NCBI GenBank assembly: GCA_037834085.1
Contig: JBBMKC010217243.1
Span: 1-34,446 of the forward strand
DNA: 34,446 bases
DNA from: Bipalium vagum
Taxonomy: Eukaryota
Direction: 5' to 3'
Numbering within the stretch: position 1 is the stretch's first letter; each line of letters starts with the position of its first letter. The notes below the pieces were generated by a model. It ran no database searches and was not told the DNA's origin. It was given only the letters and a program-made list of their open reading frames with translations. This document shows positions 4,127 through 25,000 of the stretch, one piece after another. The translations under genes and the position numbers were made by a program.

Positions 4127-7100
4127 ATGAATTTTTTCATTTTATTTTCATGTGCAGTTTTTACTTGCTTACCTGTTCTTATGATTGGGGGTCGGCACAA
4201 TTTTATAAATCTATCCAGGTTTGATTATTATGTGCATGAGAACTTTGGAAAAAGCAAAATTCGCGTCATTTCCAAAAATGAGGGTTATGAAGTTATTTTC
4301 TTTCTTTTGTACAAATGATCAATTTCCGATAAAATCCAGATCACATGTTTCAATTGCACTTACGGATCATTCGAAAAAGCTTGTGAACATGGCAGCTTGA
4401 CAAGCTTAGAGGTGGTTATCACATTTGAGAACGTGGTCGTGTCGTTTCTATTTAACGTTTCATGTGAGACTAAGCCCAATTCAAGAAATCTTGATTCTAT
4501 TCTAAGTACCAAGGAAGTTATTGGAACAGACAATATTTCTGTGTCTTGGAACCATCCAGCTGATCATATAAATTATTTCTATATCATTTTTATGAAAACG
4601 TATTTCATTCAATAACACATGAAACTTTATTTATTTACTTTCTCAGGAACAATCTCAACTCAACTTTAATAACCGAAAAGGCTGAGGTCACCTTTTCCAG
4701 CCTAAAAGAAAAGTCACACTATCAATTCTGTATCGCCACCATTGATAAAAGGTGGAGGACAAGCTTGTTTTATTGTAAGGTAATTTTAATTGACTTTGTG
4801 GAAGGTAAACGGAAAGAAAACTATTGGTCAGCATGGGAAATTTGGAGAGCCAATCCGTTATCCCATGAAAGTAATTTTGAAGTTCAGATGGTTCCTTTCA
4901 ATAGAAATAAGAGATCTACAATTGAAAACTTCAATAATCAAGTTAAAGAAAGTAGAATAGAAAGAAAAGAATTATACTTTCTCATTTCTATTATTTTAGA
5001 CAGCGGGACTGTGCAAAATTTAAATATATTTCAGCTTGGTGATGAACTTCTGAAAATCAGTTTTGATGAACCCAAGAAACCAAAAGGAGTAATAATGAAA
5101 TATAAAGTGAGAATCACAAAGACCTCTATCTGTGTAAAGGTGACATGTTACTTGTCATATTCTTTCATTGACTTCTTTCAGCTCAATGAAGACCTGCACA
5201 TTACTTATATCAATAGTGATGAGAGATACTTACCTATATGTATGCTGAAGAAATGTGCGTCCTATTTGTTTGAAGTAAGCCCAGTAAATGAATTGAACAA
5301 CAAGGGAGGATTTGTCGAAATGGTCTCTGCACCATTTGAGTATTATAATAGTAAGTCTAAGTTGTAATTATCATACAATTGATCATGATGATTAGGTGAT
5401 CCAATGGAATCTACGGTGTTTCATGCAAAATTTATAGCTGCAAATATGATCAGCATTTCCGTTCGTAATTTGATCAATGAAAATAAATGTTCCATGAAAG
5501 GATTTGTTATTGAAGTTACTGGAGAAGACAATAAAAATAATTGTCTTACAATAATAAGCTTTGCAGATAATTGTACAGAATTGAGCGGGGTAAATATGTT
5601 AAATAGTTAATAATATTATTATTAATTATTGAAATGGCATTATTTTCAGATTTTGCAAGAGAAATATAAATGTCCTAATATTGAGTTTATAAAATTTGAT
5701 CGCTTAACAGAGAATTTTCAATATTTTTCTACAATGTTTAGATATGCTGAACGAGCCAAATTTGAAGCTTCAACGATTAATAATAAGCTCGGGACATCTA
5801 TTTATTCGAAAGTACTGTTTTCAGAACAGATTCAAGGTGATTTTATTATTAGTATTTAATTCTCATGTTGATTGAGGATAATTTGATGGAAAAATTTAAA
5901 GATATGTATCAAATACAATTGTGTACTATAAAAGTCGTTTATTGAAAAAGGCTGTCAAAATTGATCCAAAATGCAAAAATATACACCGGACTTAAACCGC
6001 TCTTAAACTAGAAAAGCATGCATCGTCACATATGTACCTATGCGAAATCTATTATTTTAGACCAGAAATTTTAAAGTTACTAGAATAAATACAATATTTA
6101 AATATTTTTAAATTACCTCTCTAAATTCATAAATTGCAAATAACCTACATATTAATTAAACAAACTTACAGATTTGATATTAAAATATGCGATTAGCTAT
6201 TCGTTAACCTGATAGATTTAATAAGAAAGTTTTATATTTAACGATGTTATAATTTTTTAAAGTATTTATTTTTGATTTAATTTTTTACAATTACTGAACA
6301 TAAAATCTGAACATTAATACAGAGATCTTAAGAACCGTATTTTTAGCAGTTTTTTTATTTATTAAAAAGTTACTTAAATTCTTGATCTTATTGTGAAGCA
6401 TTTTATTTGACTTTAAATTTCTGAATCAAAAACCATTAACTTTATCTAATGTTTCTTATAGACTGCTTCACCGACTGTTATTACCCTGGTGAAGAATATA
6501 AAGGAATTAAGTCTGTTACCAAGGATGGGTATACTTGTACGTATTGGAATGAAACTAAATATTTACATTACAAAAACGTTAAATCCAACATTTGTTCCTC
6601 AATTAAAAATAATTATCCGTGGTGTATGTCAAAAAATGGATGGAAAGAATGTGATGTACCGCCATGTTCTGATATTAATTATGGTTTTAATAATATTTTT
6701 ACAATTGTATTTTGGAATTGTTACTCTTTATAGGTACGGGTTGTGTGGAAGTTCTGAATAAAATCGAAACTGCAGAATCCGTCACAATAATATGGTCCTC
6801 AACTGAACAAAATGCTAATTATATTGGATATATAACACTTCTGTATAATCAGAATCACTCATGCGTGCAATACCATGTTCAATTATGCAAAGATTGTGGA
6901 TCAGTATGAGAATAATGAACAAAGATGGAGTATTTAATGTTTCTAGGATATCATTTTAGATAGGGTACTCGGAAGTTTCTATTTGTCATGTTTTACAGGA
7001 AAAGCTGACAGCAGTATCACTTTTAAAACTATTTTCAAAAGTCTTTATCCAAAAAGAAGATACACTGTTTATATTATTCCAATTATTGATCAATTTAGAA

Positions 7101-10100
7101 CAGGAGAAGTTAAAAAGTTAATTATTCAAACAAAATTAGGAAGTATTTCTTAATCTTATCATGTCACTATTGAAGTCAATTACATATTCAAGAGCCAAGT
7201 CAACCGAAGAATATATTAATGAAGCCAGTCTCACTTGGTCAAATGTATATCAAATGGGAAAAATCTGAAGAAATTACATCTGAAACTGTTACTTATTATT
7301 CTGTGGGGATAAGAATGTCAATTTCTATTGGAATACATTTTATCAATGTTTTTAATGTATCTAAAACATTAACGGACCTAAGACATTGCTGTGAATATTG
7401 TATTCAAATCGCCAGTAAAACGGAAGTTGATTCGAGCGACTTCTCACCAGAGGTTTGTGAATATACATTTGCTCCAAGTGATATTCTTTTATTTTATTCA
7501 TTAATTTTAATGGAATTAGAACCTAGTATTGTAGAACTTAAACAGCCAGTTTCTGGGTACATGCTTAATACAGTTTTGAACTGGAAATATCTAGGAACTG
7601 AAAAATGTTCTAAAATTTATCGAATTTATGCAAAAATTAAATTTCTGGAGGAAAACATCGAATTAACATCAGGTAATGTTCTACAATAAATATTATCAAT
7701 AATATAATTATCACAAAAATAAGTATCGGTTTGATATTAAAACTCTAATATTATTAATTTTTTTAAAATAATTTAACTATTTTTAAGGTTACGCGTTTTT
7801 CAATCACTATTTAAGATACTTATAATAATACAACATTTTCATTTCATTGGATATGGAAATTTAATTTGATAACTTCTTTTATTAGTAGTTCCAAATGAAG
7901 ACCATGTATCTCAAAGTGCAAAATATTTTACAAAAATTATAATCGATAAAATCTAATCGATCGATTTCAAAAATATTTTACATTTCACCATTGTTTAACA
8001 TGTACTTTCGAATGCATTAAAAAATTGAGAGGGAAAAATTTTGTTACAGGTGTGTTATCAGAGCCTTTGACTAAGAAATAACTAAATTAACCGGAATACT
8101 TTTGAGAAGAGTAGAAATGACTTTCCAAATGTAAATAGGATACATTCTTGAAAGAAGAAAAGGAAGTGGAAGGGTTCGAAAATTAAAAAAACAAATCAGC
8201 AGAGACTCAGCCAATTTTCATAAAAATGACAAAATTATTCTTTGATATGACAAAAGAAATGAAAAATCTTTGATCATAACAAGTCCAACCAAACACTATT
8301 TTAAATTACCTGTATTGATCTAGTTCTTCAGAAATCTCTCTTAAAAGAATTCTCAAGTTAACCTTGAAACATAATACGAATAGAGCAAAATGATGTGAAG
8401 AAAACAGAAAAAAGATGGAATAACTGGATTTCTGGTAATGAATGTCAATTTGAGCTGTATGACATGAAAAAAAAAGCTGGACCAAGATTAGACCTCAAGT
8501 TCCTGGTTCGAAATTCGGACCATCCATCATAATCATATTGAATGTAATTAGCTCTACAGGCAAATGAAATTCGATTTTTATAAAAGGTACAGGAAATATT
8601 AAAAAGGTCTTAAGATTCATTTTTAAGTCTTTAACAATATGGTATAACATCTCATACCTCAAAATCCACCCCTGATTGATTACAGAAGAGAAAATGTACG
8701 TTAAGTTTAAGATAAGAAAATTCTGTTGACCTTAATCCTATTGAAAATCTTTGGGAACTGAAAAGAAAATCAAAAGATGTGGGTAGTTTACAGCTTCAAG
8801 AAAATTTGGATGGTATACCAATTACAACTATGCCAAGTCTTCAATTCAAGACATGCAAACAAGACTTGAAAGTTTTATTGAAAAAAGGAATAAATTAAAT
8901 AATTATTTTTATTGTGTCCTTCATATACGAATATGTGAAGTATTTAGTAATTTTATTATTTTAAATTAAAGTAAAATGGCAAATAAGAACCACCACCATT
9001 TGTTGTGATAACTATATGTTTGATACTTACAATTATTCAAATATTATTTATTTTATTATATTATTTATTTAAATGTTTTTCAAAAAAATATTAAGTAACC
9101 ATGAAAACTTATACTCTTATAAAATAAATAAATATATTTTATATATCACAAGTCCACTAATATTACTAAAAAATGTAACTAAAATGTTTTATTAATGAAA
9201 ATACTTTCCCTCACAATCAACTATACTTTTCTAATGAGATGTTAGATACCTTTTATAGAGTTGAGAGTCTATAGAAATTGCCAGCTACCAATTAAATTTC
9301 TTTTCTATTTCGGAATGGCTTTTACTTGAGAGAAAGACATGATAATCAGCTTGAGAAATATCGAGAGAATATGGAAATTGTTACAATACTTCTATTAAAA
9401 TTCATAGACGTTTGTGTAGCGACTAGTAACCTTGGATTATTGTGTAGGAAAACTGCTTTATTTCTTTAGATAAAAGCCTATTAATTAAGGAGAATCTTAA
9501 TTTTTCCGCGTTTCAGCTGTTGTACATACAAATAGCCAGTTATTATCTGACCACTGTAAAAAATTTTGTGATGAACATTTTACCACACGCAAAGCATGAA
9601 TTGTGAGGAAAGGCAGCATTTTGAAGTCTGTAGCATCACATCCTTGATTATCAGTCAATGATGAGTTAGTTTGTTACTTTTGCGGTTTGGTCATTTGTCA
9701 TCAGAAATAACGTTGTAATTAAAAGATTTGCAACTTCATGACATCTCAGATGCGAACACATATTGTAATTCTTTGCAACATTTTCATTTATTAATGTCCC
9801 TGAGATCCACTTATTAATCTTCCAGTGTTTTCCGATTTTGTCAATAATCTCCAATAATGCTGAGCTTAAATTCATACAGTAAAAACAACCCTGCAGAAAT
9901 GTAATGAGTTTTGATTTACCTTTATAATCACAGAACTTGTTACTAATTCAGTCTTACCTCTTTAACAAGCTAGCCGATATTGGGCACGAAAGGTAGTTTA
10001 GAAGCTAAGATGATGTCGAAATAGCCTTCAATGAATTTTTTGTCTCCAGTGACAAATAATTACTCATAAGGGATCAAAAAACTTTTTACATTAACATAAA

Positions 10101-13100
10101 TCGAATTTTTTTATTTTGATGAGATTTACATTATTTTTACTTTCAAATCAGAAAACGTTATTACTTTTCAAAAACCTAATAAAAAATTATAAAAATGTTC
10201 TGCAAAATACTAAGTTACTACAATTAGTTACTTAACTTAAGCCTTTTGTAATTAATATTAATATACAAAACGAATAGAAAAATAATAAAATAATATATTT
10301 CTATTATTGGTTCAAATAAATATTAAACAGGTTATAATTCTTTACATAACCTTGAAATAAAAATTCACTGACTGATATAATTATCGTGCTCTTTAAAAAA
10401 AAAGGAATCAAAATAATGACAATAAACTCTTATTAGACAAAACAGGGATTTAAAATTACATAACATCCCAATTAATTACAAAGTAATAATCAAGTCAATT
10501 AGAATTAATAAAATAAATAAAAAAATATTTGATAATCGATTCACCTGCAAGTAGTATGAAACCGAAAGTTTATTATTTAATTTATTTATATAGTTATCAA
10601 TAGTTTACTATAGATTTGTAATGAAATTTAATAAATAGGAAAATAAAATATTTTTACTAATTTATTAATTGTAGTCGGCTTTTTTTTCATGCTTACCTTG
10701 CATCTGCTTTAGTAATGATTATTTTGCGTCCACTTGATTTATGATTGTTTTCCGTTCGTTTAATTTTATTTAGCTTCACCTTGCTCCTTTTGGTTCCACT
10801 GTTAGTGATACTTTCAGTGTATTTTTGTACTGATTTACTTCAGTATTAATATTATTAAACTTTTTGTATTTTCTAAATTTAGTAACTTGATGTTACTATT
10901 TATAGATTTTACAAACATTTTCAATCATAAATTTATTTTTAGAAGCCTTATTTAAAATTAAAAAATACATTTATTTTTAACAAATTTATTTTATTTATTA
11001 ATTTTTTCCAAATTAATCATCGAAATGATTATTTTTTACTTAATTATGATAATAATAATAATTTTTATATTTTATTTATTATTTTCATATTTAATATTTT
11101 ATTTGATAATTATTTTAACCTAAGAAAGAAGAATAGAAAGATTTAAGGTTCTAACTTTTACATAAACCTAATTTTGAATAAAAAAACTTTTATACAACTA
11201 CACAAAATTATATTATACATAATAACAGAATATTTCTTGTCAACATAAATGAATCAATGTATAATGTGTTTGTCAGGGAATTAATGTTTTGATGGAATTG
11301 ATGGTTGGAGTCTCCACATTATTATAAAATTTTTATTACTATTATTATCCAGACACTATTGTGGTTTTTAATTATTCCCTTTAAGTTTTAATTAGATCGT
11401 GGTTTTGAGTAACCCAACACAGATAAGAATTTGAAAATGACATTTTGGCAATTAAGGTTTATTAAGATTATTAGTTGATATTTATAATTAAGCTAATTTA
11501 ATTTTTAAAATATTAATTATTTAATTATTATTACTAATAAAAAATTATATTATTTATCCTTATTTAGAAAACCACACATTCCAAATTTAATCTTTAATTG
11601 GTTATAAATATAAAAATAGATTCACAAAGTATCATATTTAAATCTTTTTAGTTAAAGAGACAATTTTATTAAAAAACTTGAAGAAAAATGTGATTTATAC
11701 TGTCAAAGTGCGAGCCGAAAGTCAAATGAAAACTCTAGAGAATGAAAACATTGGAGAGTATTCGGAAATTAGGGAGTTCTATACTGGAAATGGTAAAGAT
11801 AAGAATGGGATTATCAATGAAATATTTATAAAATTCAGTTAGTCCCAATGTTTCTTTTTATAATACAACAATCAGTGTCACAAATGAAAATGTAATTCTG
11901 AATTGGGGGATAGAGGACCGAATGAAGGGGGCGATTTTTGAATTCATCATTTTGATAAAGTCCTCAGACTCGTGGTCACATTCCGTCCATCTCAAATGCA
12001 GAAACTGTACGAATGTAGAGCAAAATGTAATTTTTTTCTTATTTATTTTTAATATGCTACTCAGCCAATCATAAAAATTGAATAAAATGTTTGACAAAAT
12101 CTTCATTGTTATTGTGAAAATATAAAATTAACGAAAATTCCTGTGAATAATTATATTTTTATTCACAAAATAAAGGATAAACGAATGTATTAATTTATAT
12201 CATTTAACCTTCAGGTCATATTTTGATAATTTGTTCCTCACTTGAAAAGGCCTTTGATTTGATCAGTTTCAGTTATTCTTAAATTAATTGTAATTGTTTT
12301 TAATTTTAAAAAAATAATAAACTATTTCCAAGGGCTCTATAATATTGCATTATTTATTATATATTTATATTTTAATAGGGGTAGATAGCTACTTATAGAT
12401 GATATATAGTATGGATAAAGAAATATTTCTTGGTGTAATTAAAGCAGAAGACATTATAATATTAAGCATAACGAGGTATCACAAACCTTATGTATTTCTT
12501 TTGCTTATTAAAATATTTAAAATGAAAATATGCTAACAGACACCGTAAAACCCTTATAGTAAAGATCAATTTCCTGCAGTCTTGAAAAAATCCAAACTTA
12601 ATATTATACTGCTAGATATTAGTTTGAGAAAAAACTAGTATCGTATTTTATATATATTATTTATACTTTATATTTATTTGTAATATCTTCTATTTTTCCA
12701 CTCTCAAATGTTTGGCGAAAACCATGAAACACTGAATAATTTAGTAAGTTTTTCCAGCATATATTAATTCGATAAACGTAAAATATTATGTGGGCCGGAA
12801 ATAAACTTTATATATTATATATATAGCTGTAAATTTAAGGTTTTTAATCAATAAGTTATTGATTATTTTTATTGTTATATATCAAAGTAAAGGTCATTTT
12901 TCAATCTATATAACGGCATAATTTTTTTCTGATAAAATTAAAATTTGAGATTTAAAAATTCATGAAAATTATAGAAAAAATTCAATTTCGAGGGATATTT
13001 TTATTCTTCTTTAAATTAGAATGAAATGCAATAAAAAACTATTTATAAATGTATCTAGCATTCGGTAAAAATTTTCTTTCATTTCTACCATACAACGGTG

Positions 13101-15791
13101 ATTCCAAAAATTTTGCCATGGTGAAGAGAGCCTTGAAGGTCACGTTAACCAAGAAGATCTTGATGACAATGTCTTGAAGAGTGGTTGAAAAAAATCGTCA
13201 AGCAACCTTTCGGGAGCTTGCAAGGGATCTTAATTCTGCTCACATTACTATTGAGAGTGGACTGAACGTATTTGAAAGAAAAAAGCTCGAAAAATAGGTG
13301 CCGTTTGAATTGAAAAAAAGCGCATAAATTGCCATTATGAGGTCTGTTCAAAATATTTGCAGCGTCTCGCAATCCTCCATTTTCTCGATCGGATTGTTGA
13401 TAATCATTATTTAAAAATCAATTAGTTTATTCACATAACAATTATAATAGTCATTCAACCGTAACGCCTCTATGTTTATTCTGTACAAAACAGAAATGTG
13501 TTTGAATTTTTTAAAGTCATTATTTTATAAGAAATATGAACGAATAAAATTATATATGAAACTAAATATCATTCAATGTCTACCACGACCTTGTCTGCAG
13601 GCATCAAATCGAAAATACACAGTATTTTTGTAACAAGGTCCATTTTCATAATAGATTGTTGCACAATGTATGAATTCATGGATACAATTGTAATAATGAA
13701 TATTTAAACAATTTATATTATATTAAAAAGGATTTGGCACATATTTTTTAAATAGCTTAAACACACAGGCGTCACCATTGGAAGACCCTTTATATACACT
13801 CAGAGATAAATGAAGATACTCTAAGTTGAACTGACATTATATATTCCAAAGGTATTCAAAAATCTGGATAAATAATTTCAAACACATTCCCTTAATATTA
13901 AAAAAATAAGATAAGATGAAAGTATTTTATCTCATTATTTGAGCATTTTATTTTATTTTCAAGTTTTCCTCATTTTTGTATTTAATTTGTAAAAATGATA
14001 CATTTTGTTTTCAGAAATATCTAACCAAATCTGATCAAATGCTCCGCAAAACTTTGCTAAACAGATGTAGAACAATACAAATTGAGCAATTCGATCCGGA
14101 TCAAATCTTTTTTCATTCTAAAATCCAAACTACAGAGGTATTAAGAACTGTAGAGATTTACTCTGTGTCCTTCATAGGAATTAAATTACTGTACAAGACA
14201 CCCATAAAAGCAGGTATTCTTTAAAAATACACTTTTTTTAAAAAAGTTGAATAATGAAATCTTATACAATATTAAAAATGTTTCAATTTTATTCAACAGC
14301 GAATGGTATATTCATATAAAACCTTTATTCCAAACATAATTCAAATTTTATAAAAAGTAATTCTTTTTAGTGACTTTCTAATCTAAGTGTATTATTAATA
14401 TAGTGCATCCCATAAAAATTACTGTTTTTGATATACTCACATTAAATTAAATTACTTGCTGTAATAAGGATTAATAAACTATTGATTTTTGTATGAAAAA
14501 TTACATCGGTTGGTTAATAACATAGTGAAATTAACTTAATAGATATGTGTGGACAGTAAGGCACTGGTTTTCGAAATTCAATTCTGGTGATATCAACATC
14601 CAACAGATTCTAGAGACATTTGGTCGCCAAAGACGATGATCTACTGGATTATGTAGATTAAGGTCTGTCTCAATAAATTCGTAAATTATTTGCTCAAAAA
14701 TGCCATTCAAAATCTATAATTCATCGGCAATTTCGATGTATTGGCAAAAATATAGATCCTCGAATGGACCCACATTAACTGACAGATTCGCAAGTTGATA
14801 AATTTTTTCAAATTTATAAAAATTTGTTGGATAACCCATTAGATAAGCGGTTTTCCAAAGAATTGTCGCTATGAATGAAAAGTTTTTTTTTATGAATAAT
14901 CCATTAGAAAATGACAAAGATTATCAACAAATAACCCACATTATGGCGGGAATAAGGTGGCTAGATTTGGAAAGAAGTACAAGCTTCAATTTTCCGGAAC
15001 TACAACGGAATTTTAATCTTTGAAATTCTTTCAGATAGTTAAAGTATTAACTCAGATATCTATTCTGCACAATTGAATCGACTTCACAAAATTCTCACAA
15101 AAATATCATATTTTAATCAATCGGAAAAGAGCTCCATTATAAGAGAAGAACGGAAAATCTCATACCAAGAAAGTCCACGGAAACTACAAAATATTGAGGG
15201 AATTGAAGTATTACCACATCCTCCAAACTTCCCCGACGTCACAACATCAGACTTCCACTTGTTCCGTGCCGTTCCACTTGTTTTCAGAACAAGGAAGACC
15301 TGGAAAGAGACCCTCAGCGTTTTTTGAATTTAAATCTCCAAAACAAGATTCTCAAAATGCAGAACATTAGGTCTTTGTGTGTGAGAACGCTGAATTTTAA
15401 TTTAGTTCATAATTTTTTGATTAAACAAAAATTTTGTATTGAATTTTTTGAATTAAAGTGATTTTTTATGGGAAACCGTAAAGTAAGACTTGAAAAATAA
15501 AATTTTTCTAGAATTATTTAACATTTTTTTGAATTATAATTAATTTTTGGAATCCTAACGTAAATGATTTATCTTAGAGCTTTCGAAGGAGAAACAAATA
15601 ACCATTATTATCAGCATAATAATCATTCTTCTGTTTGTTGTGGTGTTCCTAGTTTTAGGAAAACGAAATCCAGATTTATTTCGGAGGTAGTGCTATATTA
15701 ATATTTCACTTATTTTTGATGTTTTAGATTGGTGAATCGAAATATTGATGAAAATCGAGATTCTTTTGTGATGGAAATGCAAGAAATCTGA
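4127..15791 (+). CDS. Type I transmembrane multi-FN3 + kringle receptor-like protein with a short cytoplasmic tail (~1048 aa, 17 exons)
   Basis: All junctions are GT-AG and phase-compatible. Exons: 4127-4291, 4340-4599, 4647-4951, 5000-5139, 5182-5350, 5396-5589, 5650-5836, 6462-6683, 6734-6903, 6947-7142, 7193-7477, 7520-7672, 11652-11792, 11839-12026, 14015-14213, 15578-15686, 15728-15791 (3147 nt, no internal stop). Signal peptide: MNFFILFSCAVFTCLPVLMIG. FN3 signatures: ISVSWNHP...LKEKSHYQFCI, MYIKWEK...LRHCCEYCIQIAS, VLNWKY...LKKNVIYTVKVRAES. Kringle in exon 8. TM: ITIIISIIIILLFVVVFLVLG followed by KR. AATAAA follows the TGA at 15793. Three in-frame introns (4952-4999, 5140-5181, 7478-7519) are the least certain. 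Confidence 0.85.
6462..6683 (+). other. Kringle-domain exon (phase 1-1) of the FN3 receptor gene
   Basis: DCYYPGEEYKGIKSVTKDGYTCTYW...NICSS...YPWCMSKNGWKECDVPPC has the six kringle cysteines and the Y-x-G, T-x-x-G-x-x-C-x-x-W, PWC and C-D-V-P-x-C motifs. Confidence 0.9.
7703..9016 (+). mobile_element. Degenerate Tc1-family transposon inside receptor intron 12
   Basis: Relic transposase: HTH and LERRKGSGRVRKL (about 8010-8185), and DLNPIENLWELK (8728-8763, the Tc1 SPDLNPIENLW motif). Imperfect inverted ends: TATAATTATCACAAAAAT at 7703 and ATTTGTTGTGATAACTATA ending near 9016. Many stops and frameshifts. Confidence 0.75.
9200..9480 (-). mobile_element. Mariner transposase C-terminal relic
   Basis: The minus strand gives VFLHNNPR...EVL*QFPYSLDISQADYHVFLS, a decayed form of mariner HDNA.PH and HPPYSPDLAPSDYHLF. 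Confidence 0.7.
9500..10175 (-). pseudogene. Decayed spliced orphan coding sequence nested antisense in receptor intron 12
   Basis: Exon-like blocks with a GTAAGA donor (9957) and a TGCAG acceptor (9891): LIPYE*LFVTGDKKFIEGYFDIILASKLPFVPNIG*LVKE|GCFYCMNLSSALLEIIDKIGKHWKINKW.... There are two in-frame stops and no recognisable family. Confidence 0.35.
12785..13405 (+). mobile_element. 5' half of a mariner element (relic) in receptor intron 14
   Basis: The plus strand 13090-13400 reads approximately QR*FQKFCHGEESLE...DDNVLK..VEKNRQATFRELARDL...KKLEK*VPFEL...PFLDRIV, matching the mariner N-terminus and WVPHEL motif. A TIR-like TATTATGTGGGCCGGAAA lies near 12785. Confidence 0.75.
14401..15478 (+). 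mobile_element. Mariner relic with both TIRs in receptor intron 15
   Basis: The left end TA|TAGTGCATCCCATAAAAATTAC and right end GTGATTTTTTATGGGAAACCG|TA are imperfect inverted repeats. Internal IVAMNEKF (decayed DEKW) and IEVLPHPPNFPDVTTSDFHLFR (ORF 15073-15327). Confidence 0.85.
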
Positions 15792-15999
15792 AAATAAAAA
15801 TAATCGTCTTTTGTTTCTTGAAACATTCATAAATAAATATTTTCTGGGTAAACACGCCGTTTAGGTCACAAAGTTATCTTTTGTTTTAATATTGGTCTTT
15901 TAACAAAAATAGAATTTTTATATTATTATTCCGATCAAAAGCAAGGTAGTCACGATTCACTAATGCTAGTCATTTCTCCTTTAGTGTTTTTTGAGTAAA

Positions 16000-17010
16000 G
16001 AAACCAAGTTGATAACAATATTATTTCACAATGATACTTTCCTCAGCCTAAAAGAAATAATCATAAACTATACCAGCCCTTGACCACCAAATAGGGATTA
16101 TTATTTTGCTTTAGATATTAGCTTGTTGATTGTATTAGTTCGAGTTTTCATGATTTTAAATTTTTAAACTAGCCAATGAATGCTGCATTAACCTGAATAA
16201 ATGGTAGTCCGAGGAGGCCAATTCAGAGCTATATGGCAAATGAAACAGAAATTTCCAATGAATTTCTTTAATTTTTCCTTGAACAAATTTTGCTACCTGT
16301 GGTCTACCGCTGTTCGTCATAAAATCTATTTCTCCTATATTCACGCTGTGTAATTGAAGTACTTAATATACGCGATCTAATAGTTTTACGTACAGAGCAC
16401 ATGTGATTGTCTGACCAGGATTCAGCGCTTCAAAGTAAACTAAGCCATCCGTACTCCACCACATACACAATAGCTTTTAAATCGTGCATTTTCTATTTAG
16501 GAGTCCTCATTTGGCTTTCACTAGAACTAAACTTCTGCTATTTTCTACAGAAAATTCAAAATGTATGCACTTGTCACCCGATGTATGGATTGTTTCAACA
16601 AAAGCACTAATCTTAGATTTGAGCAATAACAGTTACCAAATTTAACACGTACTGCCATGTTTCAAGACTATGTTGATGTGCCATTCATCTTTCCATCTCT
16701 GTTTTGTTAATTGAATGTATATCATTTCCTATGGCTACGTGGTTGCATTTAAACCTCTCAGCATATTCTGGATTAGTTTGTCCAGGAGATGTCTCAATGA
16801 ATTCTTTTAAATCATTATTATCTACCGTTTGAGGAGGTCGTTCATGTTGATAACTTTTAGATCAAAATTTCCATGTTTAAATCTTTGAAACCATATACTG
16901 AATTGACTATTACTAATTATAATGTCATCAAACACATCGAATATTGGTTCATATGATTCTCCGACAGTCTTTGATTTTTAAAATTGTTGGGTTGGAGCAA
17001 AGACACAACC
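16000..17010 (-). mobile_element. Degenerate mariner transposon
   Basis: The minus strand has WFQRFKHGNFDL near 16860-16895, GDKCIHF (decayed GDEKWI) near 16560-16580, and WKFLFHLPYSSELASSDYHLFRLMQHSL (ORF 16156-16344). Boundaries are approximate. Confidence 0.85.
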
Positions 17011-17189: not shown

Positions 17190-19935
17190 GATCAGAGTCC
17201 GCAAATAGGGACTAAAAACAGACAGAATTTACAAGTTTTAAAAATGAACGAGGAAACTAGAACAGACATAAGTACGTAGCCTTTTGAGGGATAATTTAGA
17301 ATTTTATCAATTATCTTGAAAAAAATAATATACCGGAGAGTTCTTAAAATTTGCACGAAAATAATCGATTTCAAGAAGACTACCAATCCAACTAAATATA
17401 TTTTCTAATATATCCTGACAGCGCTTTATCCAAAGTATTCAACATCCCTACCTGCATCATCCATCGGTATAATCATTGGAATCGTGGTTCTACATAAGAA
17501 GCAAATTTTTTCTCAACTAAGAAATGTTGCATTACCTGGAACAGGTGGTAGGCAAAATATGGAATGTTCATAGTACAATGATAATAAGATAATTATTGAC
17601 TCCATTTCTGTTTGCTAATGCTGGTCACTTTTTTCAATTTTACTTTTCAAACTCTAGATGAGCACAAAATGATGATGTTCTTATTGTTTCATCAAACTGT
17701 AAAAGCTCGAAATGTATAATAAGTTTAAGTATCTATAAATTACACTACTCTACAAATTTAAACTTTTTTGGATCGGAAACAACATTATGATAATAAGGTA
17801 TATTTTTTGCAGCTTATTACGAATATGAAGTCCTTTTTCCTGCAAGACATCTGGTTTAGGCAAAATACATTTTAAAGGAAAATAAGAAAAACACTTAATT
17901 TAAAAATAATAAAATAAATAATAATATAAATAAAATAAGTAATACATTAAAGACATGTTAATTATTTCTTTTTAAATGACTCTCATTTGTCAAGTTATAA
18001 AATGTTATAAATTTTTCAAACATGGATTTTAGAGGTTTCGAGTCTTTTGTAAGGGATGTGTTTGTATAAAGATTTCTCCATTATAATTATGCAGGCTGTG
18101 ATATACCCTGTCACCCATATTTCTATGCATCAGCTAATAAAACCTGGTGACAGTCAATCAGATAATCTGCATTATTAAGTTTTATTTATGTCACAAAAGA
18201 ATTGTTTTATTTCTTTGCCAATTTTTATTATTAAGTAAAAGCTTGTGTTACAAAAGAAAAGTAAAAATAATTTTTTATTTCTATGCCAATTTTGACAATA
18301 TTCAAACTTTTATAAAACTGAAACATTTCTCGTTTTAACTTAATCATATTTAAAAAGTAGTTTAATAAAAACACGCTCTCAGCCAAAGCGAAACAAAATC
18401 TCTTTAACATCTCTGAGATCATTTGTGAAGTTTTCTGATTTCTCCAAGATTTCTGATCAAAATTGAATACACATTTTATTTCAGTAAAACTGCATTTGAT
18501 CAATCGGTTACGGCATGCGAGAGATAACAAAAAATGATCCTAAAGATCGCAGATAAGTTAAATATATTATCAAATTCTGATTGGTCTAAATTATTATGGA
18601 TATTCTTTTTTAAATTAATCAGAGGAAATACTAACAACAAATTGGATTTTAATTTTTCCCTGTTTGGATGTTAATCTTTGATTGTCGATCTTTATTAATA
18701 ATAATACGGAAATCATGAATGTTATCAAAAATGTTCATAATCACTTTAACTTCTTCATTAACTTTGCCTTTTCGTAAAACGCAATTCATTAAATGGTCCA
18801 AGACTTTACTGGTTCTGCTGGATTGCGAATGCTTACTAAGATGTGACCTGAGATGACGCTCTGTTTCCAATCTGTATAAGCTATTACATTAATGACATTT
18901 CAATTGGTACAAAATATATTAACTTGCAATATAACTGGTGTCGACGTTTTAATTTTTAATTAATTCTTCGTTTTCGCTATAATTGAAATTACTTTCAGAT
19001 CTTCTTTTTTTGGTTTTTCCATTACCTTTTAGAAGGTTTAACCATGTTGAGAATGTAATCTTCTTTTCTACTTTCTTTTGAAATTGTCTTTCTCAGTTAT
19101 TAATTTTTTCATTGATATTTTCCTTTCATTCTATAAAGGTTATGTATTCTTTGTTAATCCTTGTTTAAAAATATCAAATTCCTTGTGTTTCTCTACAGAG
19201 CCTGATGTTATTGACCATACTATATGAATTAAGTCTTCCATTAAGCCAGTTTACAATTATTCTTCACTGAAAATATTGCTTGAAGCATATAATACTGTAT
19301 TCGACTCTTTTCTATATAAACTGGTCTATGATTTAATATTCCTTTTCTTTGTTTTGATAAAGCATCTGAAAATGTCAGGTTCAAAATGATACCCATGTTA
19401 TTATCATAAAATGCAATCAATATTTCTTAAAATTTTGATTTGCTCTGATGTGCTTTTTTAATTCTTGGAAAAGAGGGCATTTTCCAATGCATGAATTGTC
19501 TTTTTGTTTCTGGGTCGTATTGAAAGATCCAGGTTTCGTCAAGAACTTTTTTAGAAGATCGGGATCTTCCTCAATATGTTCTAGCATAGTGTCACAAGTA
19601 ATGTATTTTCACAATGCCATATTATTTACAGCTTATCAATATTAGAAACAAGCGATTTTTCATCACCGGAAATCGTTATCTTTAAGAATCCATTAAGAGC
19701 TTTTTTGGTACAAGTTTATATAGTGTACAAATATTTTCTATAGATTACACTAAGCTATCATATCAACATTTAAAACCTTTGAGAAATTATGGATTGCTAT
19801 ATCTAACAAATTTCTTCGATTTCTCAAGATTTTCATAACAATTTCTTTCAATTTTCGATAATATATTGTTGCATTTGACCTCAAAATGTCTACTTCAAAT
19901 TCCAATTCTTTAACGATACCAACTCTAAACATCGT
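17190..19935 (-). pseudogene. Decayed multi-exon orphan coding region interrupted by a mariner relic
   Basis: Consecutive minus-strand ORF blocks (19750-19932, 18649-18870, 18231-18530, 17192-17386) have plausible splice sites, such as acceptors at 18872 and 18540 and a 46 bp GTAATG...TGTAG intron at 17535-17490. No stop-free path could be built. Confidence 0.3.
19210..19700 (-). mobile_element. Mariner transposase relic
   Basis: The antisense of ORF 19448-19645 reads DETWIFQYDPETKRQFMHWKMPSFPRIKKAHQSK, the conserved mariner block after the first catalytic Asp. Confidence 0.85.
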
Positions 19936-20027
19936 TTGACAGGAGAACCATTAGCAATTAAAAACAATATTAAATTTAAAAAGTTAGTTATTTCGTGTTA
20001 GTTTTCATTGTTAGGAAACTTTGAAGA

Positions 20028-20219
20028 CAGTTAAACGTGTTCAAGTTGAACATTCATCGAAATGAACAAATTTTTAAATGTTTTGAAACGACGTGCCTTT
20101 GTTGTAATGGTCATAATCTTCTTTGTCAAATATTTTCTCTTGGGTATGTTGAACGTTTTATTATTTGAAAATTAGCGGATTATTGGTCCCATGATGTTCA
20201 ACCTAATCAGGTTCTACTG
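20028..20219. mobile_element. MITE (192 bp), Tc1/mariner-pogo type
   Basis: Imperfect TIRs: CAGTTAAACGTGTTCAAGTTGAACAT (left) and CAGTAGAACCTGATTAGGTTGAACAT (right, reverse complement). TA flanks the right end and GA the left. No coding capacity. Confidence 0.75.
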
Positions 20220-20275
20220 TATAAAACTAAATAATCAATTTGGTTACCTAATGAAAATTTATGATAAATGATATC

Positions 20276-20436
20276 TGTAAGCACACTCAGAGTCTGATTG
20301 AAACATTTATTAATCACAAGTTTGAAAACTGCCTTTTCACCAAGATCAGTCAATTCAAAAAAATCTTTCTAAATTTTATATTGGTAATTAATATATATTA
20401 ATTAAAAATTCATGAAGACTTAAGCTTTTTCTGATA
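20276..20436 (-). repeat. 3' LTR of the gypsy relic (~160 bp)
   Basis: It follows the integrase end, shares ~34 bp with 23091-23124, contains AATAAA on the minus strand and ends ...GTGTGCTTACA. Confidence 0.6.
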
Positions 20437-22999
20437 CTTCCGCTGTTAAGAATCGGTTTAGCTTTTCGACATTTCGTTCCAGTTTTCGTCCTTCTTCATT
20501 TTCCAATATATACCGTCTATTGTGTCCATAAATCTCTCTTGGCCTTTGTTTCGAATTTCCATTTCTACCAGAACATTATCTCTAACTTCGAACTTTCTTT
20601 TAGTGAGGATTGATGGATATCAAAATCCACTGACTTAGTATAGCCTTAGTCACAGTTTGTTTGTCCTGTGAAGGTAGTGCAGTCAAAGAAATATAAGTAT
20701 CATACTGATCTATGATTCCCAGATTATGATTACCTTTTCCACCCCGAGGCCTTTTTTAACGGACCACAAATATCTACATATATGTTCTCGAACATTTATA
20801 GAACGTCTAGCTTGTATGTCTTTTCCATTGTCTTTGTTGTTGAAGTGTTAAAACGTTGACAATATTCACATGTTTTTAATATCTCTCTTACCTTTTCTTC
20901 TAGATTCTTTACTCTAAATTTATTGCTTGTATAGTACGCAACTTTTTAGATCCCACATGGGCTAGCTTTCCATGCGTTGCTTCGATAACTTTCTCTAGAT
21001 CTTTGTTACTTGGCATTTTCTTTCTTAATATCATCTAATTTCCTTGTCTGGATCTTATCTCGCTTTGAGTCTTCATGATATATCAGACATTGTGTGCAAA
21101 TATCACATTTCGGTCGAGATAAACATTGGTATTGTTTTACATTGAGCCTTTTTTGTATTCCAACCTGATGTCTAAAGAGCTCAAAAAATTTATTCATATC
21201 TGAAACTGAGACATTATTGGCCTTTTTGTCTTCACCATGAACGTGATAGCTTTGTGATCGACATGTAGTGTAAAACTTTTCCCATACAAGTAATGATTGA
21301 AAGGCTTGCAAACATAGTAGATTGTTAGTAGTTCTTTCTGGGTAATACAATATCCTTTCTTATGACTAGACATTGTATGCGACCCACGCGCAATTACTTT
21401 TTCTCGACCTTTCTCCTTTTTCTGTGATAATACCACTCCTATTGTGTCGAAGCTTGCATCCGTATCTAGAATAAATTCTCTTTGGACATCTGGTATGCAA
21501 CGGTAGTTAACGCTTTTCTTAGGTCTTCGAATGTTCTGTGTTACCTATCCATTCCAGTCGCTTGCTATCCACACTACACAGTTGTTCAAACGCCCTAGTC
21601 TTTTATAAACTTTCAATAATACTTGCATATGCCTAGAAAGCTACGTAGGATCTTAATGCATTTAGGTCCTGAGAAATTTCTTATAGCTTAAATCTTTGTT
21701 GGGTCCGACTAAATCACATTTTTGTTAACGATATGTGCCAAAATTTTGATTTCCTGTCTGAGAAATTGACACTTATCGGGATTTATCCTTAATCTGGCCT
21801 TTTTAATTCTTTAAATTACGTTATCCAATCTATCGTAATGGTATTTTCTATTTCCTGAAAATATCAGTATGTCGTCCAAATATACTAATGCTCTTTTGCT
21901 CTTTCCTACGATCTTCAGCATCTATTTCTGAAAAAATCAGGGGGCTGCTGCAATTCCAAAAGGCATTCGGTTGAAACAGAATTGTACCCATTTCGTAGAG
22001 AAAGCAGATTTTTCTTTGATGGGTCATCTAATTCTATCTTATAGTATACGTTATCCAGATCAAGTGAACTGAAAATCTTTGCTCCACCCACCAATCCATC
22101 ATTTCCTCAATATTTGGCATCGAGAAAGCTGGTTCTTTCGTCACTATATTCTGGTCTGAAGTCCAAGAAAAGTCGCAGATCCTTTATATCCTTCTTCAAC
22201 ACACATATCAGAGGCGCGTACGATGGAGAATTACATTTCTTAATAATGTTATTATCGAATAAATTTTTATTGTCTTCTCAATCTTTTCTTCTAAATTTAT
22301 TAGTTACCTAAACGGTTTGACATTGATTAACTCTCCTTTCGTTTTGATTTCATGGTTCATGACGTGTGTTCGATCAATGTCCCATTTATCAGCCATGAAT
22401 GCATCTTTGTATTTCTGAATGATAAATCTAAGTTTCTCGTGGTCTCTTGTATTTATTGAGATCAACACTTTTCTGATTGCCTCGTCCGTCTGTATTAATC
22501 TTCCAAACTTTGGTTCAATTTTACACAAAATTCCATTGAAGTCTTCGCCATTGTCTTTTACAATATTTTCCCCCATTCTTATTGCTTCCGTTGCATAACT
22601 ATATTCTGAACTGTCTCCCTAATGACGTATTTTATATCCAAATAACCTTTGAAAATCGATTCCTGCAATCATCCCCGGTACTGCGTTGTCCATCACAATA
22701 AATTCGACTTCTCGGTACATTCCTTCGTTCCGAACCATCACCTATATCTTTCCTAAGATCATTAGTTTTATATCATTTGCACAGCGTAATTGATCACTTC
22801 TTCCATCCATACCTATCTTCAGTAGTTTCTGAAAACACCTATTACTAATAACAGTTACCACTGCTCTTATGTCTAACAAGCAATCGAACTTTATTCCTTG
22901 AATTTCCATGATTGTGCTCGGTCGGCCTTGCATTCGATCTCATCAAATCTCGGCCACTTGCGTACTTGGAAAATTCTTGTCTTCTACCTGCTCCCTGTT

Positions 23000-23082
23000 C
23001 ACAATCCCCGTTGTTAAGGGCACCTGATTATAAGGGACATTTTCACGCTGTACGAACCGTCCCTTATAACGGGATTTAACTG
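23000..23082. mobile_element. Pogo/Tc1-like DNA transposon end inserted into the gypsy 5' LTR
   Basis: The minus strand reads TA|CAGTTAAATCCCGTTATAAGGGAC...GTCCCTTATAATCAGGTGCCCTTAACAACGGGG. It has a CAGT terminus at TA and subterminal CCCTTA(T/A)AA repeats. A related sequence lies at 27608-27667. Confidence 0.65.
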
Positions 23083-23349: not shown

Positions 23350-24079
23350 ATGAAGTTCCTTGAAATTTTTTCAACGATTTCTCTGCTTAGTGGAGTGCAT
23401 CTATTATGCCCCTTTCCTTATAATATTAAAAATGGAGTATGTGTCTTTGTAAATGAGACTGGAGTTGATGTCTGCAAAGCTTGGAAATCATGTATAAAAA
23501 TTCAAGGTACTCTTGGTTTATCAAAAGATATACGAGCTATTAAAACAACCTTGAAATATCAATTTTATTTCACTGGGATTAGTGATCTCTATAATGAAAG
23601 GTATAAATCAAAAACTGGGTGGTTAGAATTCGATGGAACAGAAATGAAAGATATTGATCTTTGGCATCGAATTGAGCCAGATATGAAACAACAAAGTCAA
23701 GATTGTGTTGTCTATAGAAATGGTTTAGGAGATACTGTTTGTCAAAGCAGATGGCCATTTATTTGTTTTTATAGAAAAGTCCAAATAAAAGACTCGCGAA
23801 CATTTCATATGAGAACATCTATAATTTTTAATCAGGACAATGAGGAAGGCTGCTACGAAATATATGATCTGAAAACCAAAATTAAATGTGCAATCAAGTT
23901 TGATTAGACAATTTTTTAATTTAATAATTAATTAAACATTTAGGTGCCTTCAAGTTCAATATTGCCTGTCTTTTTACTATACTGATTTGAAAAATGTGTC
24001 TTGTATCTTGTCAATCTATTTCGATAGCACATTACCGAAACGTTTTGAGAGACTTGGACAATGGTCAAGATTTTACTAA
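23350..24079 (+). CDS. Secreted C-type lectin + PAN/apple domain protein (227 aa, 2 exons)
   Basis: Exons 23350-23897 and 23944-24079, with a 46 bp phase-2 intron (GTTTGA...TTTAG). Signal peptide is present. Long-form CTLD: CPFPY..NGVCVF, AWKSC..QGTL, FTGISD, WLEFDGT, W..IEPD, DCVVY, D..C...PFIC. PAN-like C-terminus: KCAIKCLQVQYCLSFYY...CILS. AATAAA lies at 24117 and 24151. Confidence 0.88.
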
Positions 24080-24223: not shown

Positions 24224-25000
24224 TGAGGATCAACAACTTTAGGGGATTGAAAATATTCTTCATTTTTTATAGATGAAATAAGTATTTAAAGGTAACATTT
24301 ATGTAAATATAATTAATTTTTATGAAAACCAAAAGTAATCGGTATACAAAAAATGTGCCATTTGCGATGGGTTTTGCACCAATCCTCAAAAAATATGGTG
24401 TCAAAGAAGAAACAAACAACTGTTTCCCACTCTTCTTTTGTTACAAATTATCGACCCCTAAAATTTTTAAAAAGATTTTTGAAGAGACAAAATTCACAGG
24501 GATATAAGTCTGGACTATAAGGAGGGTGTTGAAGCAACTCGACTCCCTTACCATTCAAATATTTGATTGTTAGTGAAGATTTATGATGACGAGGATTATC
24601 GTGGTACAGAATCATTTTCTTTACACAACACTTTTGACGGCTCTCAGAAATTTCTGCATTGCTTCTAGGAAAACAGATAAGCCGGATCTTGTATTTGATA
24701 TGGTGTGAAAGTTTGAGGTACCACATGTCTGGCATGCAGGCATTTAAGTAGAATATTGTGGATTCAATCTCCTTAGATTTTCAGCACGTCTGCTATTGGA
24801 TTTATAGTGAAACTGGGTCTTTGTTGGTCATATCTCAATCTGCATTCATATTTTCATCAGTAGTAACATTTGCTTGGCGACTCGAGCGCTGAAGATCACC
24901 AAAAGATGTTCTAAAGGTTAAAAACTTGGTAAGGATTGTGAGGATTTCGCAAAAATTAAATATAATACCTATTTCATCCATTATGAATTTTAATAATTAT
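24224..25000 (-). mobile_element. Degenerate mariner transposon
   Basis: ORF 24448-24735 has ILYHDNPRHH...VELLQHPPYSPDLYPCEFCLF. An N-terminal relic (DLQRSSRQANVTTDEN) lies at 24850-24900, and an end-like TA|TGAGG at 24222. Confidence 0.88.

What the first reader, a model, noticed from the sequence alone, without database searches (positions are those of the whole stretch)
4127..15791. Hidden 17-exon orphan receptor: FN3 array with an embedded kringle, a TM helix and a non-catalytic tail
Seen: about ten separate short ORFs, plus exons missing from the ORF track, splice into one stop-free 1048 aa frame across 11.7 kb. The order is signal peptide, ~3-4 FN3, kringle, 4 FN3, TM, ~30 aa tail (KRNPDLFRRLVNRNIDENRDSFVMEMQEI). 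Known: membrane kringle proteins such as ROR/MuSK (Ig/Fz/kinase) and Kremen (WSC/CUB) use other partner domains, while FN3-array receptors such as RPTPs, Tie and Sevenless normally carry a phosphatase or kinase. Inference: this is a lineage-specific adhesion molecule, co-receptor or decoy with an architecture I do not recognise.
Basis: partly seen in the sequence, partly recalled or inferred. Interest (0 to 1): 0.8.

Follow-up and report, generated by a model that had tools for sequence, protein, structure and literature searches.

The report
Planarian FN3–kringle membrane protein gene
The window holds a real 17-exon gene for a single-pass cell-surface protein: a chain of fibronectin-III domains with one shortened kringle in the middle and a short non-enzymatic tail, one of a small gene family found so far only in this flatworm-like genome; it is a new mix of familiar parts, not a new kind of molecule.

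Summary

- **Kringle.** Exon 8 is a true but shortened kringle. A profile of five paralogous exons hits tPA kringle 2 at 1e-9 and plasminogen at 8e-27.
- **FN3.** The flanking exons are divergent FN3.
- **Distal exons.** Paralogs support their joining. Contig C196141 is collinear for exons 1-15, long introns included, with dN/dS 0.32. Two more distant paralogs carry the exon-15 homologue followed, after 53-nt introns of the same phases, by a transmembrane exon; one also has a homologous short tail ending in a stop.
- **No catalytic domain.** No kinase or phosphatase signal lies downstream.
- **Relatives.** It is one of at least five loci, so not a singleton. A scan of 1.84 billion proteins with exons 3-5 found only generic FN3 arrays.
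- **Origin.** All domain borders sit in phase-1 introns and the kringle is a 1-1 exon, as expected for exon shuffling.

There is no RNA evidence and function is untested. This is a new variant of a known kind, of moderate interest.

The parts
4127..4291 (+). Exon 1: start codon, hydrophobic signal-like peptide (about 22 aa), start of the N-terminal region
   Evidence: The paralog on C196141 also starts at a Met about 21 aa before the conserved RHNFINLSRFDY motif, with an in-frame stop upstream.
4340..4599 (+). Exon 2: Cys-containing N-terminal region of unknown fold, then the N-half of FN3-1
   Evidence: 50% identity to the paralog.
4647..4951 (+). Exon 3: C-half of FN3-1 fused in frame to the C-half remnant of a second FN3. 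The paralog has a full FN3 split by an intron here.
   Evidence: Frame-0 conservation of VILIDFVE and VPFNRNK with the paralog supports read-through of 4780-4951.
5000..5350 (+). Exons 4 (5000-5139) and 5 (5182-5350): one FN3 domain with an internal phase-0 intron
   Evidence: Pfam fn3 25.9 bits, E 1.2e-5, on 4564-5364.
5396..5836 (+). Exons 6 (5396-5589) and 7 (5650-5836): atypical FN3 with a Cys-rich insert split by a phase-0 intron
   Evidence: The profile of the N-halves hits titin FN3 pairs at 1.8e-5.
6462..6683 (+). Exon 8: shortened kringle on a symmetrical phase 1-1 exon. It has the six kringle cysteines plus one extra. The canonical lysine-site residues are not conserved.
   Evidence: Pfam Kringle 18.5 bits, E 0.003. 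Paralog profile against the PDB: tPA K2 1e-9, plasminogen 8e-27. AF2 model pLDDT 62; the top-ranked Foldseek hits listed are all kringle-containing chains, TM about 0.65. Atlas nearest clusters are kringle.
6734..7142 (+). Exons 9 (6734-6903) and 10 (6947-7142): second atypical FN3 with the Cys-rich insert
   Evidence: NDNF_C weak hit.
7193..7477 (+). Exon 11: complete FN3 on one phase 1-1 exon
   Evidence: Pfam fn3 E 0.002. Paralog profile against the PDB: PTP-delta FN3 1.2e-9, titin 9e-25.
7520..7672 (+). Exon 12: N-half of an FN3; phase-1 donor at 7673
   Evidence: 54% identity to the paralog.
7673..11651 (+). Intron 12 (3979 nt), inflated by a dispersed repeat (about 8050-8975)
   Evidence: At least 182 first-look copies in the genome at 65-74% identity. 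The paralog has a 2.36-kb intron at the same place.
11652..11792 (+). Exon 13: complementary C-half of the FN3 begun in exon 12
   Evidence: Weak fn3 hit to profile positions 50-72. 80% identity to the paralog.
11839..12026 (+). Exon 14: N-half of the third atypical FN3
14015..14213 (+). Exon 15: C-half of the third atypical FN3, membrane-proximal
14214..15577 (+). Intron 15 (1364 nt), holding a mariner-like repeat copy (about 14545-15470)
   Evidence: At least 297 first-look copies at about 75% identity. The same intron is 53 nt in paralog L033.
15578..15686 (+). Exon 16: juxtamembrane residues, a 21-23-aa TM helix, and a basic stop-transfer KR followed by NP
   Evidence: Homologous TM exons follow exon 15 directly in L033 and L034.
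15728..15791 (+). Exon 17: last 20 aa of the cytoplasmic tail and the TGA stop; AATAAA at 15793-15798
   Evidence: The L033 tail exon shares the pattern LVxRxxDExxxxFV and also ends about 20 aa later.

Best explanation
Window 4127-15791 (+) is an intact gene for a type I single-pass membrane glycoprotein of 1048 aa.

Domain order: signal peptide; a Cys-containing N-terminal region; about 3.5 FN3 domains; one shortened kringle; four more FN3 domains, three of the FN3s overall being an atypical Cys-insert subtype; a TM helix; and a tail of about 30 residues with no enzymatic domain.

Context: it belongs to a small family of at least five loci in an AT-rich planarian-type genome that also carries a large expansion of ordinary kringles.

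Origin (inferred): every domain border lies in a phase-1 intron and the kringle sits on one symmetrical 1-1 exon. The architecture is therefore best explained by classical exon shuffling, with a kringle exon dropped into a phase-1 intron of an FN3-array receptor gene. Later events were paralog duplication, transposon inflation of three or more introns, and an in-frame deletion that halved one FN3 in this copy.

Mechanism (inferred): a non-catalytic binding receptor. The FN3 stalk presents a kringle that lacks the canonical lysine-binding residues and so more likely makes a protein-protein contact, as in ROR or Kremen kringles. Any signal or sorting would pass through partners that bind the short conserved tail.

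Shown: gene structure, domain identities, family, purifying selection, TM and tail conservation. Inferred: membrane topology, exon-shuffling origin, binding role. Not shown: expression, ligand.
For: - Exon model and phases: from sequence read.
- FN3.
- Kringle.
- Collinear paralog: C196141 covers exons 1-15, including long introns between exons 12/13 and 14/15. All of its exons but the kringle exon are free of stops, and summed dN/dS is 0.32 with dS 0.85.
- Further paralog fragments.
- TM and tail: paralogs L033 and L034 have the exon-15 homologue followed by a TM exon. L033 has 53-nt introns of the same phases (1, then 2), and its tail exon is homologous to the window's and ends in a stop.
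- The clean TM run is rare in the window: 2 in six frames.
- Start codon and N-terminal motif are conserved.
- No kinase or PTP family appears in any + strand open stretch of at least 45 aa from 15.8 to 34.4 kb.
- Long introns 12 and 15 carry dispersed repeats.
- Twelve N-x-S/T sequons and 35 Cys lie in the ectodomain exons, none in the TM or tail exons.
- The genome is planarian-like: a mitochondrial HSP70 from the assembly is 88% identical to the Dugesia japonica mortalin-like protein, against about 80-83% for other phyla.
Against:
- The spliced protein was not run through a signal-peptide or TM predictor, because the joined step was left out by rule.
- The single-sequence Pfam kringle score (18.5 bits) is below the gathering cut-off of 34.3, and the AF2 model is of low confidence (pLDDT 62).
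- This copy has lost half an FN3, and the closest paralog has a stop and lost cysteines in its kringle exon, so the family shows decay.
- No paralog of the TM exon was found by direct search; its homology was seen only by reading downstream of exon-15 homologues.
- The contig was not itself shown to belong to the planarian rather than to another organism in the assembly.
Confidence: 0.8

Rival explanations
1. Two transcription units, or mainly a secreted isoform: a proximal gene (4127 to about 7689) makes a soluble FN3-kringle protein by reading through the 7673 donor to the TAA at 7687-7689, and the distal exons 13-17 belong to another gene or are rarely joined.
For: The frame stays open only five codons past the 7672 donor and then stops. 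The next exon is 4 kb away, across a transposon copy. There is no RNA evidence for the junction.
Against: Exon 12 encodes only the N-half of an FN3, and exon 13 encodes exactly the missing C-half in the right phase (fn3 profile positions 50-72). The same split, with a 2.36-kb intron, is kept in the C196141 paralog, where exons 12 and 13 are 54% and 80% identical to the window's. No start codon or signal peptide precedes exon 13. A minor secreted isoform is not excluded.
Confidence: 0.06
2. An unexpressed or decaying gene copy: a young pseudogene whose frame has not yet been hit by stops.
For: An in-frame deletion removed half an FN3 and an intron in exon 3 relative to the paralog. The sister copy C196141 has a TAA and lost cysteines in its kringle exon, and C261615 also has a stop. 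Three or more introns hold transposon insertions. There are no expression data.
Against: 3147 nt stay open across 17 exons in DNA of about 27% G+C, with all 32 splice dinucleotides intact. All six kringle cysteines and the PWC and W..C motifs are intact in this copy. dN/dS is 0.32 over 15 exons, although that value averages over both lineages.
Confidence: 0.1
3. The Cys-rich exon 8 is not a kringle but an unrelated small disulfide module that merely resembles one, so the 'FN3 + kringle' architecture is an over-reading.
For: The single-sequence Pfam score is below the cut-off. About 17 residues are missing relative to canonical kringles (alignment; Cys spacings 19, 18, 9, 8, 4). The AF2 confidence is low.
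Against: The paralog profile reaches E 1e-9 on single solved kringles and 8e-27 on plasminogen, aligning all six cysteines, the Y.G..S.T..G..C..W motif, PWC and W..C..P.C. The top-ranked Foldseek hits listed are all kringle-containing chains. The nearest Atlas clusters are kringle. Weaker hits of the exon in its own genome are canonical kringles.
Confidence: 0.03

Closest known systems
ROR1/ROR2, MuSK (some species) and Drosophila Nrk/Ror
   Same: Single-pass membrane proteins with one membrane-proximal kringle that is not known to bind lysine. ROR1/2 and Nrk kringles are among the sequence and fold matches.
   Different: ROR has Ig, Frizzled-CRD, kringle and an intracellular kinase or pseudokinase. 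Here there is no Ig or Fz hit, the kringle sits in the middle of an FN3 array, and the tail is about 30 aa.
Kremen1/2
   Same: Type I membrane protein with a kringle and a short non-catalytic tail, acting as a co-receptor (for Dkk; general knowledge).
   Different: Kremen is kringle-WSC-CUB with an N-terminal kringle. No WSC or CUB signal was found here; the partners are FN3 domains.
Tmed-krg1, the flatworm anchor-cell kringle protein (PMC9229212)
   Same: A membrane-bound kringle protein of a flatworm, with homologues reported in other flatworms. It shows that membrane kringle proteins are used in this phylum, and RNAi gave a non-adhesive phenotype.
   Different: Tmed-krg1 has six consecutive kringles, called lysine-binding by its authors, and no FN3 is mentioned. 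The window protein has one shortened kringle without the canonical lysine-site residues, inside eight or so FN3 domains.
R3-type receptor tyrosine phosphatases (PTPRQ, PTPRB, PTPRJ; DEP-1)
   Same: Long FN3-only ectodomain, single TM. PTPRQ of a caecilian is the best hit of exons 3-5 in 1.84 billion proteins (E 3.5e-7, 25% identity), and PTP-delta/LAR FN3s are top single-domain PDB hits of exon 11.
   Different: The similarity is generic FN3 only. There is no PTP domain or PTP_tm region, the tail ends after about 30 aa, and RPTPs have no kringle.
Non-catalytic FN3 membrane receptors (DCC/neogenin, Ihog/CDON/BOC, gp130-type cytokine receptors, FNDC proteins)
   Same: FN3 stalks, single TM and no enzymatic domain; they work through bound partners (general knowledge). 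gp130, neogenin and DCC FN3s appear among the PDB hits.
   Different: Those have Ig or cytokine-binding modules and mostly long cytoplasmic tails with known docking motifs. None has a kringle.

Membership tests
Kringle domain (Pfam PF00051) | Six cysteines in the kringle order, with flanking motifs (C-Y..G..Y.G..S.T..G..C..W, PWC, W..C..P.C) | tested here: met
   All six align to solved kringles and are invariant in five paralogous exons. There is one extra Cys at the exon start.
Kringle domain (Pfam PF00051) | Score over Pfam's gathering cut-off (34.3 bits) | tested here: not met
   The single sequence scores 18.5 bits, E 0.0027. However, a five-sequence family profile scores 42 bits (E 1e-9) on tPA kringle 2.
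Kringle domain (Pfam PF00051) | Kringle fold | tested here: inconclusive
   The AF2 model has pLDDT 62.5. The top-ranked Foldseek PDB hits listed are all kringle-containing chains, TM 0.57-0.71, but with E of 2e-3 or weaker.
Kringle domain (Pfam PF00051) | Canonical length (about 78-80 aa between the first and last Cys) | tested here: not met
   64 aa from the first to the sixth kringle Cys. Deletions lie in the Cys2-Cys3, Cys3-Cys4 and Cys4-Cys5 loops.
Lysine-binding kringles (plasminogen K1/K4, tPA K2 type) | Anionic pair (Asp55/Asp57), cationic Lys35/Arg71 and an aromatic trough. The residue list is from general knowledge. | tested here: not met
   In the K4 alignment, the window has K and N at the Asp55/57 columns and G at Arg71, and the Lys35 region is deleted. 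Only the two Trp are kept.
Fibronectin type III (Pfam PF00041) | Significant match to the fn3 profile or to solved FN3 domains | tested here: met
   fn3 25.9 bits (cut-off 25) on 4564-5364, and E 0.002 on 7174-7686. The exon-11 profile hits PTP-delta FN3 at 1.2e-9. The atypical N-half profile hits titin FN3 at 1.8e-5.
ROR/MuSK receptor family | Ig and Frizzled-CRD domains outside, kinase or pseudokinase domain inside | tested here: not met
   No Ig, Fz or kinase family in any exon or in downstream + strand open stretches. The tail ends after about 30 aa, as it does in a paralog.
Kremen | Kringle followed by WSC and CUB domains | tested here: not met
   No WSC or CUB hit in the exon-by-exon Pfam scans.
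Receptor protein tyrosine phosphatases (R3 and LAR types) | Intracellular PTP domain (PF00102) | tested here: not met
   There is a stop 30 aa after the TM, and no Y_phosphatase hit in 18.6 kb downstream on the + strand.
Type I single-pass membrane protein | N-terminal signal peptide, one TM helix, basic residues on the cytoplasmic side | tested here: inconclusive
   A hydrophobic N-terminus of about 22 aa and a 21-aa apolar run followed by KR are seen directly. The TM is conserved in paralogs. No dedicated predictor was available, and the joined protein was not analysed.

The most novel reading that the evidence does not exclude
The family is a planarian-restricted class of non-catalytic signalling or adhesion co-receptors. 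In this reading, a lysine-site-less mini-kringle, captured as a 1-1 exon from the genome's expanded kringle pool, forms a new ligand-binding site in the middle of an FN3 stalk. The conserved juxtamembrane NP motif and the LVxRxxDE..FV tail would recruit an adaptor or sorting partner. The kringle exon can also be lost again without breaking the frame, as the C196141 copy suggests.
Probability: 0.12. Interest if true: 0.6.

Novelty: new variant of a known kind. Interest (0 to 1): 0.35.

Why it matters
If it is expressed, this is a clean natural example of exon shuffling building a new cell-surface architecture. A kringle sits on a symmetrical phase 1-1 exon inside an FN3 array, with paralogs that show the module intact, shortened or decaying.

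It adds a candidate receptor or adhesion family to planarian biology, where membrane kringle proteins already have one known role in adhesion (PMC9229212).

It also shows that short-intron, AT-rich genomes hide long multi-exon surface proteins that ORF tracks miss.

It does not overturn anything. Lineage-specific mosaics of FN3, kringle and TM segments are expected in metazoan genomes, and non-catalytic FN3 receptors are common.

Tried and rejected
1. **Alternative splicing of 4780-5000.** I considered donor 4780, a 39-nt micro-exon at 4832-4870 and acceptor 5004, which looked attractive by splice consensus. I rejected it because the paralog conserves the frame-0 read-through (VILIDFVE, VPFNRNK) and the phases only close with weak donors.
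3. **Word search with 4564-5364.** Nothing at E of 1e-3 or better.
4. **Full library scan with the same stretch.** Three generic FN3-array proteins only.
5. **Direct search for TM-exon paralogs.** One weak hit, C23995 (E 1.6), which I read as chance. A DNA search found only the window itself.
6. **Exact look-up of the neighbouring lectin ORF** to identify the source: not on record.
7. **Literature.** No paper in the library describes an FN3+kringle membrane family.
8. **Tandem duplicate.** No second copy of the gene lies in the window.
9. **Joined protein.** Searching, folding or running predictors on the joined 1048-aa protein was left out.
10. **Complex prediction.** No job was sent: there is no candidate partner.
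Full report
**Setting**

The window is AT-rich (22-32% G+C over the gene) and is contig C217243 of a 440-Mb assembly in 272,664 contigs. A mitochondrial-type HSP70 from the same assembly is 88% identical to the Dugesia japonica mortalin-like protein and 93% identical to an unnamed Logan contig. It is about 80-83% identical to molluscs, trematodes and others. I did not show that this particular contig belongs to that organism.

**Observation**

- There are 17 exons and 16 GT-AG introns.
- Every split codon is phase-compatible and no exon has an in-frame stop.
- The total is 3147 nt = 1048 aa plus TGA at 15789-15791.
- Twelve introns are 41-60 nt. The other four are 625, 3979, 1988 and 1364 nt.

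All searches were exon by exon, by reference, and phase checks used only the three bases of each split codon.

**Domain identities**

Exon-level Pfam scans give fn3 at 25.9 bits (E 1.2e-5) for 4564-5364 and E 0.002 for 7174-7686. Several halves give weaker FN3-type hits.

- *Exon 11.* A four-sequence profile of exon 11 and its paralogs hits solved FN3 domains: PTP-delta 1.2e-9, titin 9e-25.
- *Atypical repeats.* The N-halves of the three atypical repeats (exons 6, 9, 14 and their paralogs) align with one another, share the C..C insert and hit titin FN3 pairs at 1.8e-5. This agrees with note s1-746248.
- *Exon 8 alone.* It scores only 18.5 bits on Pfam Kringle, below the cut-off of 34.3.
- *Exon 8 as a profile.* A profile of five paralogous exons hits tPA kringle 2 at 1e-9, plasminogen K4 at 5e-8, ROR1 at 1e-6 and whole plasminogen at 8e-27. 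All six cysteines and the flanking motifs align.
- *Exon 8 fold.* An AF2 model is of low confidence (pLDDT 62). Even so, the top-ranked Foldseek PDB hits listed are all kringle-containing chains, with TM about 0.65, and the nearest Atlas clusters are kringle.

Exon 8 is therefore a genuine but shortened kringle: 64 residues from Cys1 to Cys6, with deletions in three loops. In the alignment to plasminogen K4, the columns of Asp55 and Asp57 hold K and N, Arg71 is G, and the Lys35 segment is deleted. By the established definition of the lysine-binding site, which I take from general knowledge, this kringle should not bind lysine.

**Do the distal exons belong?**

This was the weakest point of the finding, and paralogs settle most of it.

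Contig C196141 (14.7 kb) carries a collinear copy of exons 1-15. It has long introns at the same two places, 2.36 kb between exons 12 and 13 and 2.2 kb between exons 14 and 15. Exon 12 encodes only the N-half of an FN3, and exon 13 encodes the complementary C-half in phase 1.

Summed over 15 exons, dN/dS between the two copies is 0.32 with dS 0.85, so the family has evolved as coding sequence.

The TM exon was not found by direct search. However, two more distant paralogs, C201372 and C232207, hold the exon-15 homologue at 50-52% identity. Each is followed by a TM exon whose hydrophobic core is followed by a basic pair and NP.
- In C201372 the intron before the TM exon is 53 nt and phase 1.
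- In C201372 a second 53-nt, phase-2 intron then leads to a tail exon that shares the pattern LVxRxxDExxxxFV with the window's exon 17.
- That tail exon also ends in a stop about 20 residues later.
- The intron phases (1, then 2) are the same as in the window.

Within the window, a clean 21-residue apolar run occurs only twice in all six frames, and one of them is exon 16.

The long introns 12 and 15 are inflated by old dispersed repeats, with at least 182 and at least 297 first-look copies at 65-77% identity. Intron 14 has a weak Tc3-type transposase trace.

**No catalytic domain**

The tail ends after about 30 residues, both here and in the paralog. None of the 58 + strand open stretches of at least 45 aa between 15.8 and 34.4 kb matches a kinase or phosphatase family. 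Only a C-type lectin and transposase fragments appear.

**The 5' end**

The paralog also begins at a Met about 21 residues before the conserved RHNFINLSRFDY motif, with a stop just upstream. This supports ATG 4127 as the start.

**Details that differ from a simple reading**

1. Exon 3 is a fusion. The paralog has a complete extra FN3 split by an intron, whereas the window keeps only its C-half in frame. The count before the kringle is therefore an N-terminal region of unknown fold, FN3, half an FN3, FN3 and an atypical FN3.
2. The gene is not a singleton.
   - Kringle-exon homologues lie on six other contigs, falling into at least four further sequence types.
   - Exon 11, 14 and 15 homologues lie on further small contigs.
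   - One member sits on an 810-nt contig of ENA metagenome assembly ERZ27257134, where an FN3-like C-half ORF lies upstream of the kringle exon.
3. The closest paralog's kringle exon has a TAA and has lost Cys2 and the PWC motif, while its other 14 exons are open. Because the exon is 1-1 symmetrical, it could be skipped in frame. This is an inference.

**Relatives elsewhere**

The word search with 4564-5364 found nothing. The full scan of 1.84 billion cluster representatives found three weak hits: PTPRQ of a caecilian at 3.5e-7 and two unnamed FN3-array proteins. All three are generic FN3 arrays, and none of the three has a Pfam Kringle hit.

The library does hold planarian sequences. The absence therefore suggests a narrow distribution, but only exons 3-5 were tested this way.

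The literature library has no FN3+kringle membrane family. The nearest flatworm item is Tmed-krg1, an anchor-cell membrane protein with six kringles whose knock-down abolishes adhesion (PMC9229212).

The genome itself has at least 65 canonical kringle matches over Pfam's cut-off, often in tandem. This fits note s1-747384.

**How it most likely arose and works**

All domain borders fall in phase-1 introns: after exons 3, 5, 7, 8, 10, 11, 13 and 15. The introns inside FN3 domains are phase 0 or 1, and the kringle is a single 1-1 exon. That is the classical signature of exon shuffling among extracellular modules.

My best explanation is that a kringle exon from the expanded local pool was inserted into a phase-1 intron of an FN3-array receptor gene. 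Duplication and divergence followed.

Functionally I commit to a non-catalytic type I binding receptor, either an adhesion molecule or a co-receptor. Its mini-kringle would make a protein-protein contact rather than a lysine contact, and its short conserved tail would serve sorting or adaptor binding. Topology and role are inferred; expression is unknown.

**Verdict**

The word 'orphan' and the premise about catalytic tails are overstated, and the function is open. This is a new arrangement of well-known modules, a new variant of a known kind, and of moderate interest.

Noticed in passing
window 23350-23907 (+): Single-exon ORF of 185 aa with a hydrophobic N-terminus and a C-type lectin domain (Lectin_C, 24.3 bits, E 5e-5). 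It looks like a neighbouring secreted lectin gene.
   Followed up: partly
window 27917-28723 (+): 268-aa open frame with no Pfam match and a hydrophobic, TM-like stretch near its C-terminus followed by basic residues. It could be another lineage-specific membrane protein or one exon of one.
   Followed up: partly
window 26024-26713 (+) and 24448-24735 (-): Transposase fragments: a CENP-B_N/HTH (pogo-like) N-terminal ORF and a DDE_3 remnant. More mariner/Tc1-like remnants sit in introns 12, 14 and 15 of the gene and just downstream (16156-16344, -).
   Followed up: partly
G000, many contigs (e.g. C193415, C48790, C201025, C252954, C12548): Large expansion of canonical kringle domains: at least 65 matches over Pfam's cut-off, often two or more side by side on one contig, each on a single open frame.
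   Followed up: partly
L019 (C196141) 6571-6789: The closest paralog's kringle exon has a TAA stop and has lost Cys2 and the PWC motif, while its other 14 exons stay open. Either the copy is a young pseudogene or it skips this 1-1 exon.
   Followed up: partly
window exons 13-15 vs L020 139-2886: The distal exons are much closer between the two paralogs (72-80% aa identity, dS 0.33-0.63) than the proximal ones (42-69%, dS mostly 0.44-1.4 and saturating in exons 8 and 12). This hints at gene conversion, or at a mosaic duplication history of the 3' part.
   Followed up: no
L044 (ENA ERZ27257134, contig k141_2080396) 365-619: A family member (mini-kringle exon, 57% aa identity, 24% G+C) with an FN3-like ORF upstream turns up in a public metagenome assembly. 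It is either a further paralog or a related species present in that sample.
   Followed up: partly
window 19000-23000: A composition shift: G+C up to 0.37, with strongly negative GC and AT skew. Minus-strand ORFs at 21006-21350 and 22304-22576 have no convincing Pfam match. It may be a repeat or a minus-strand gene.
   Followed up: no
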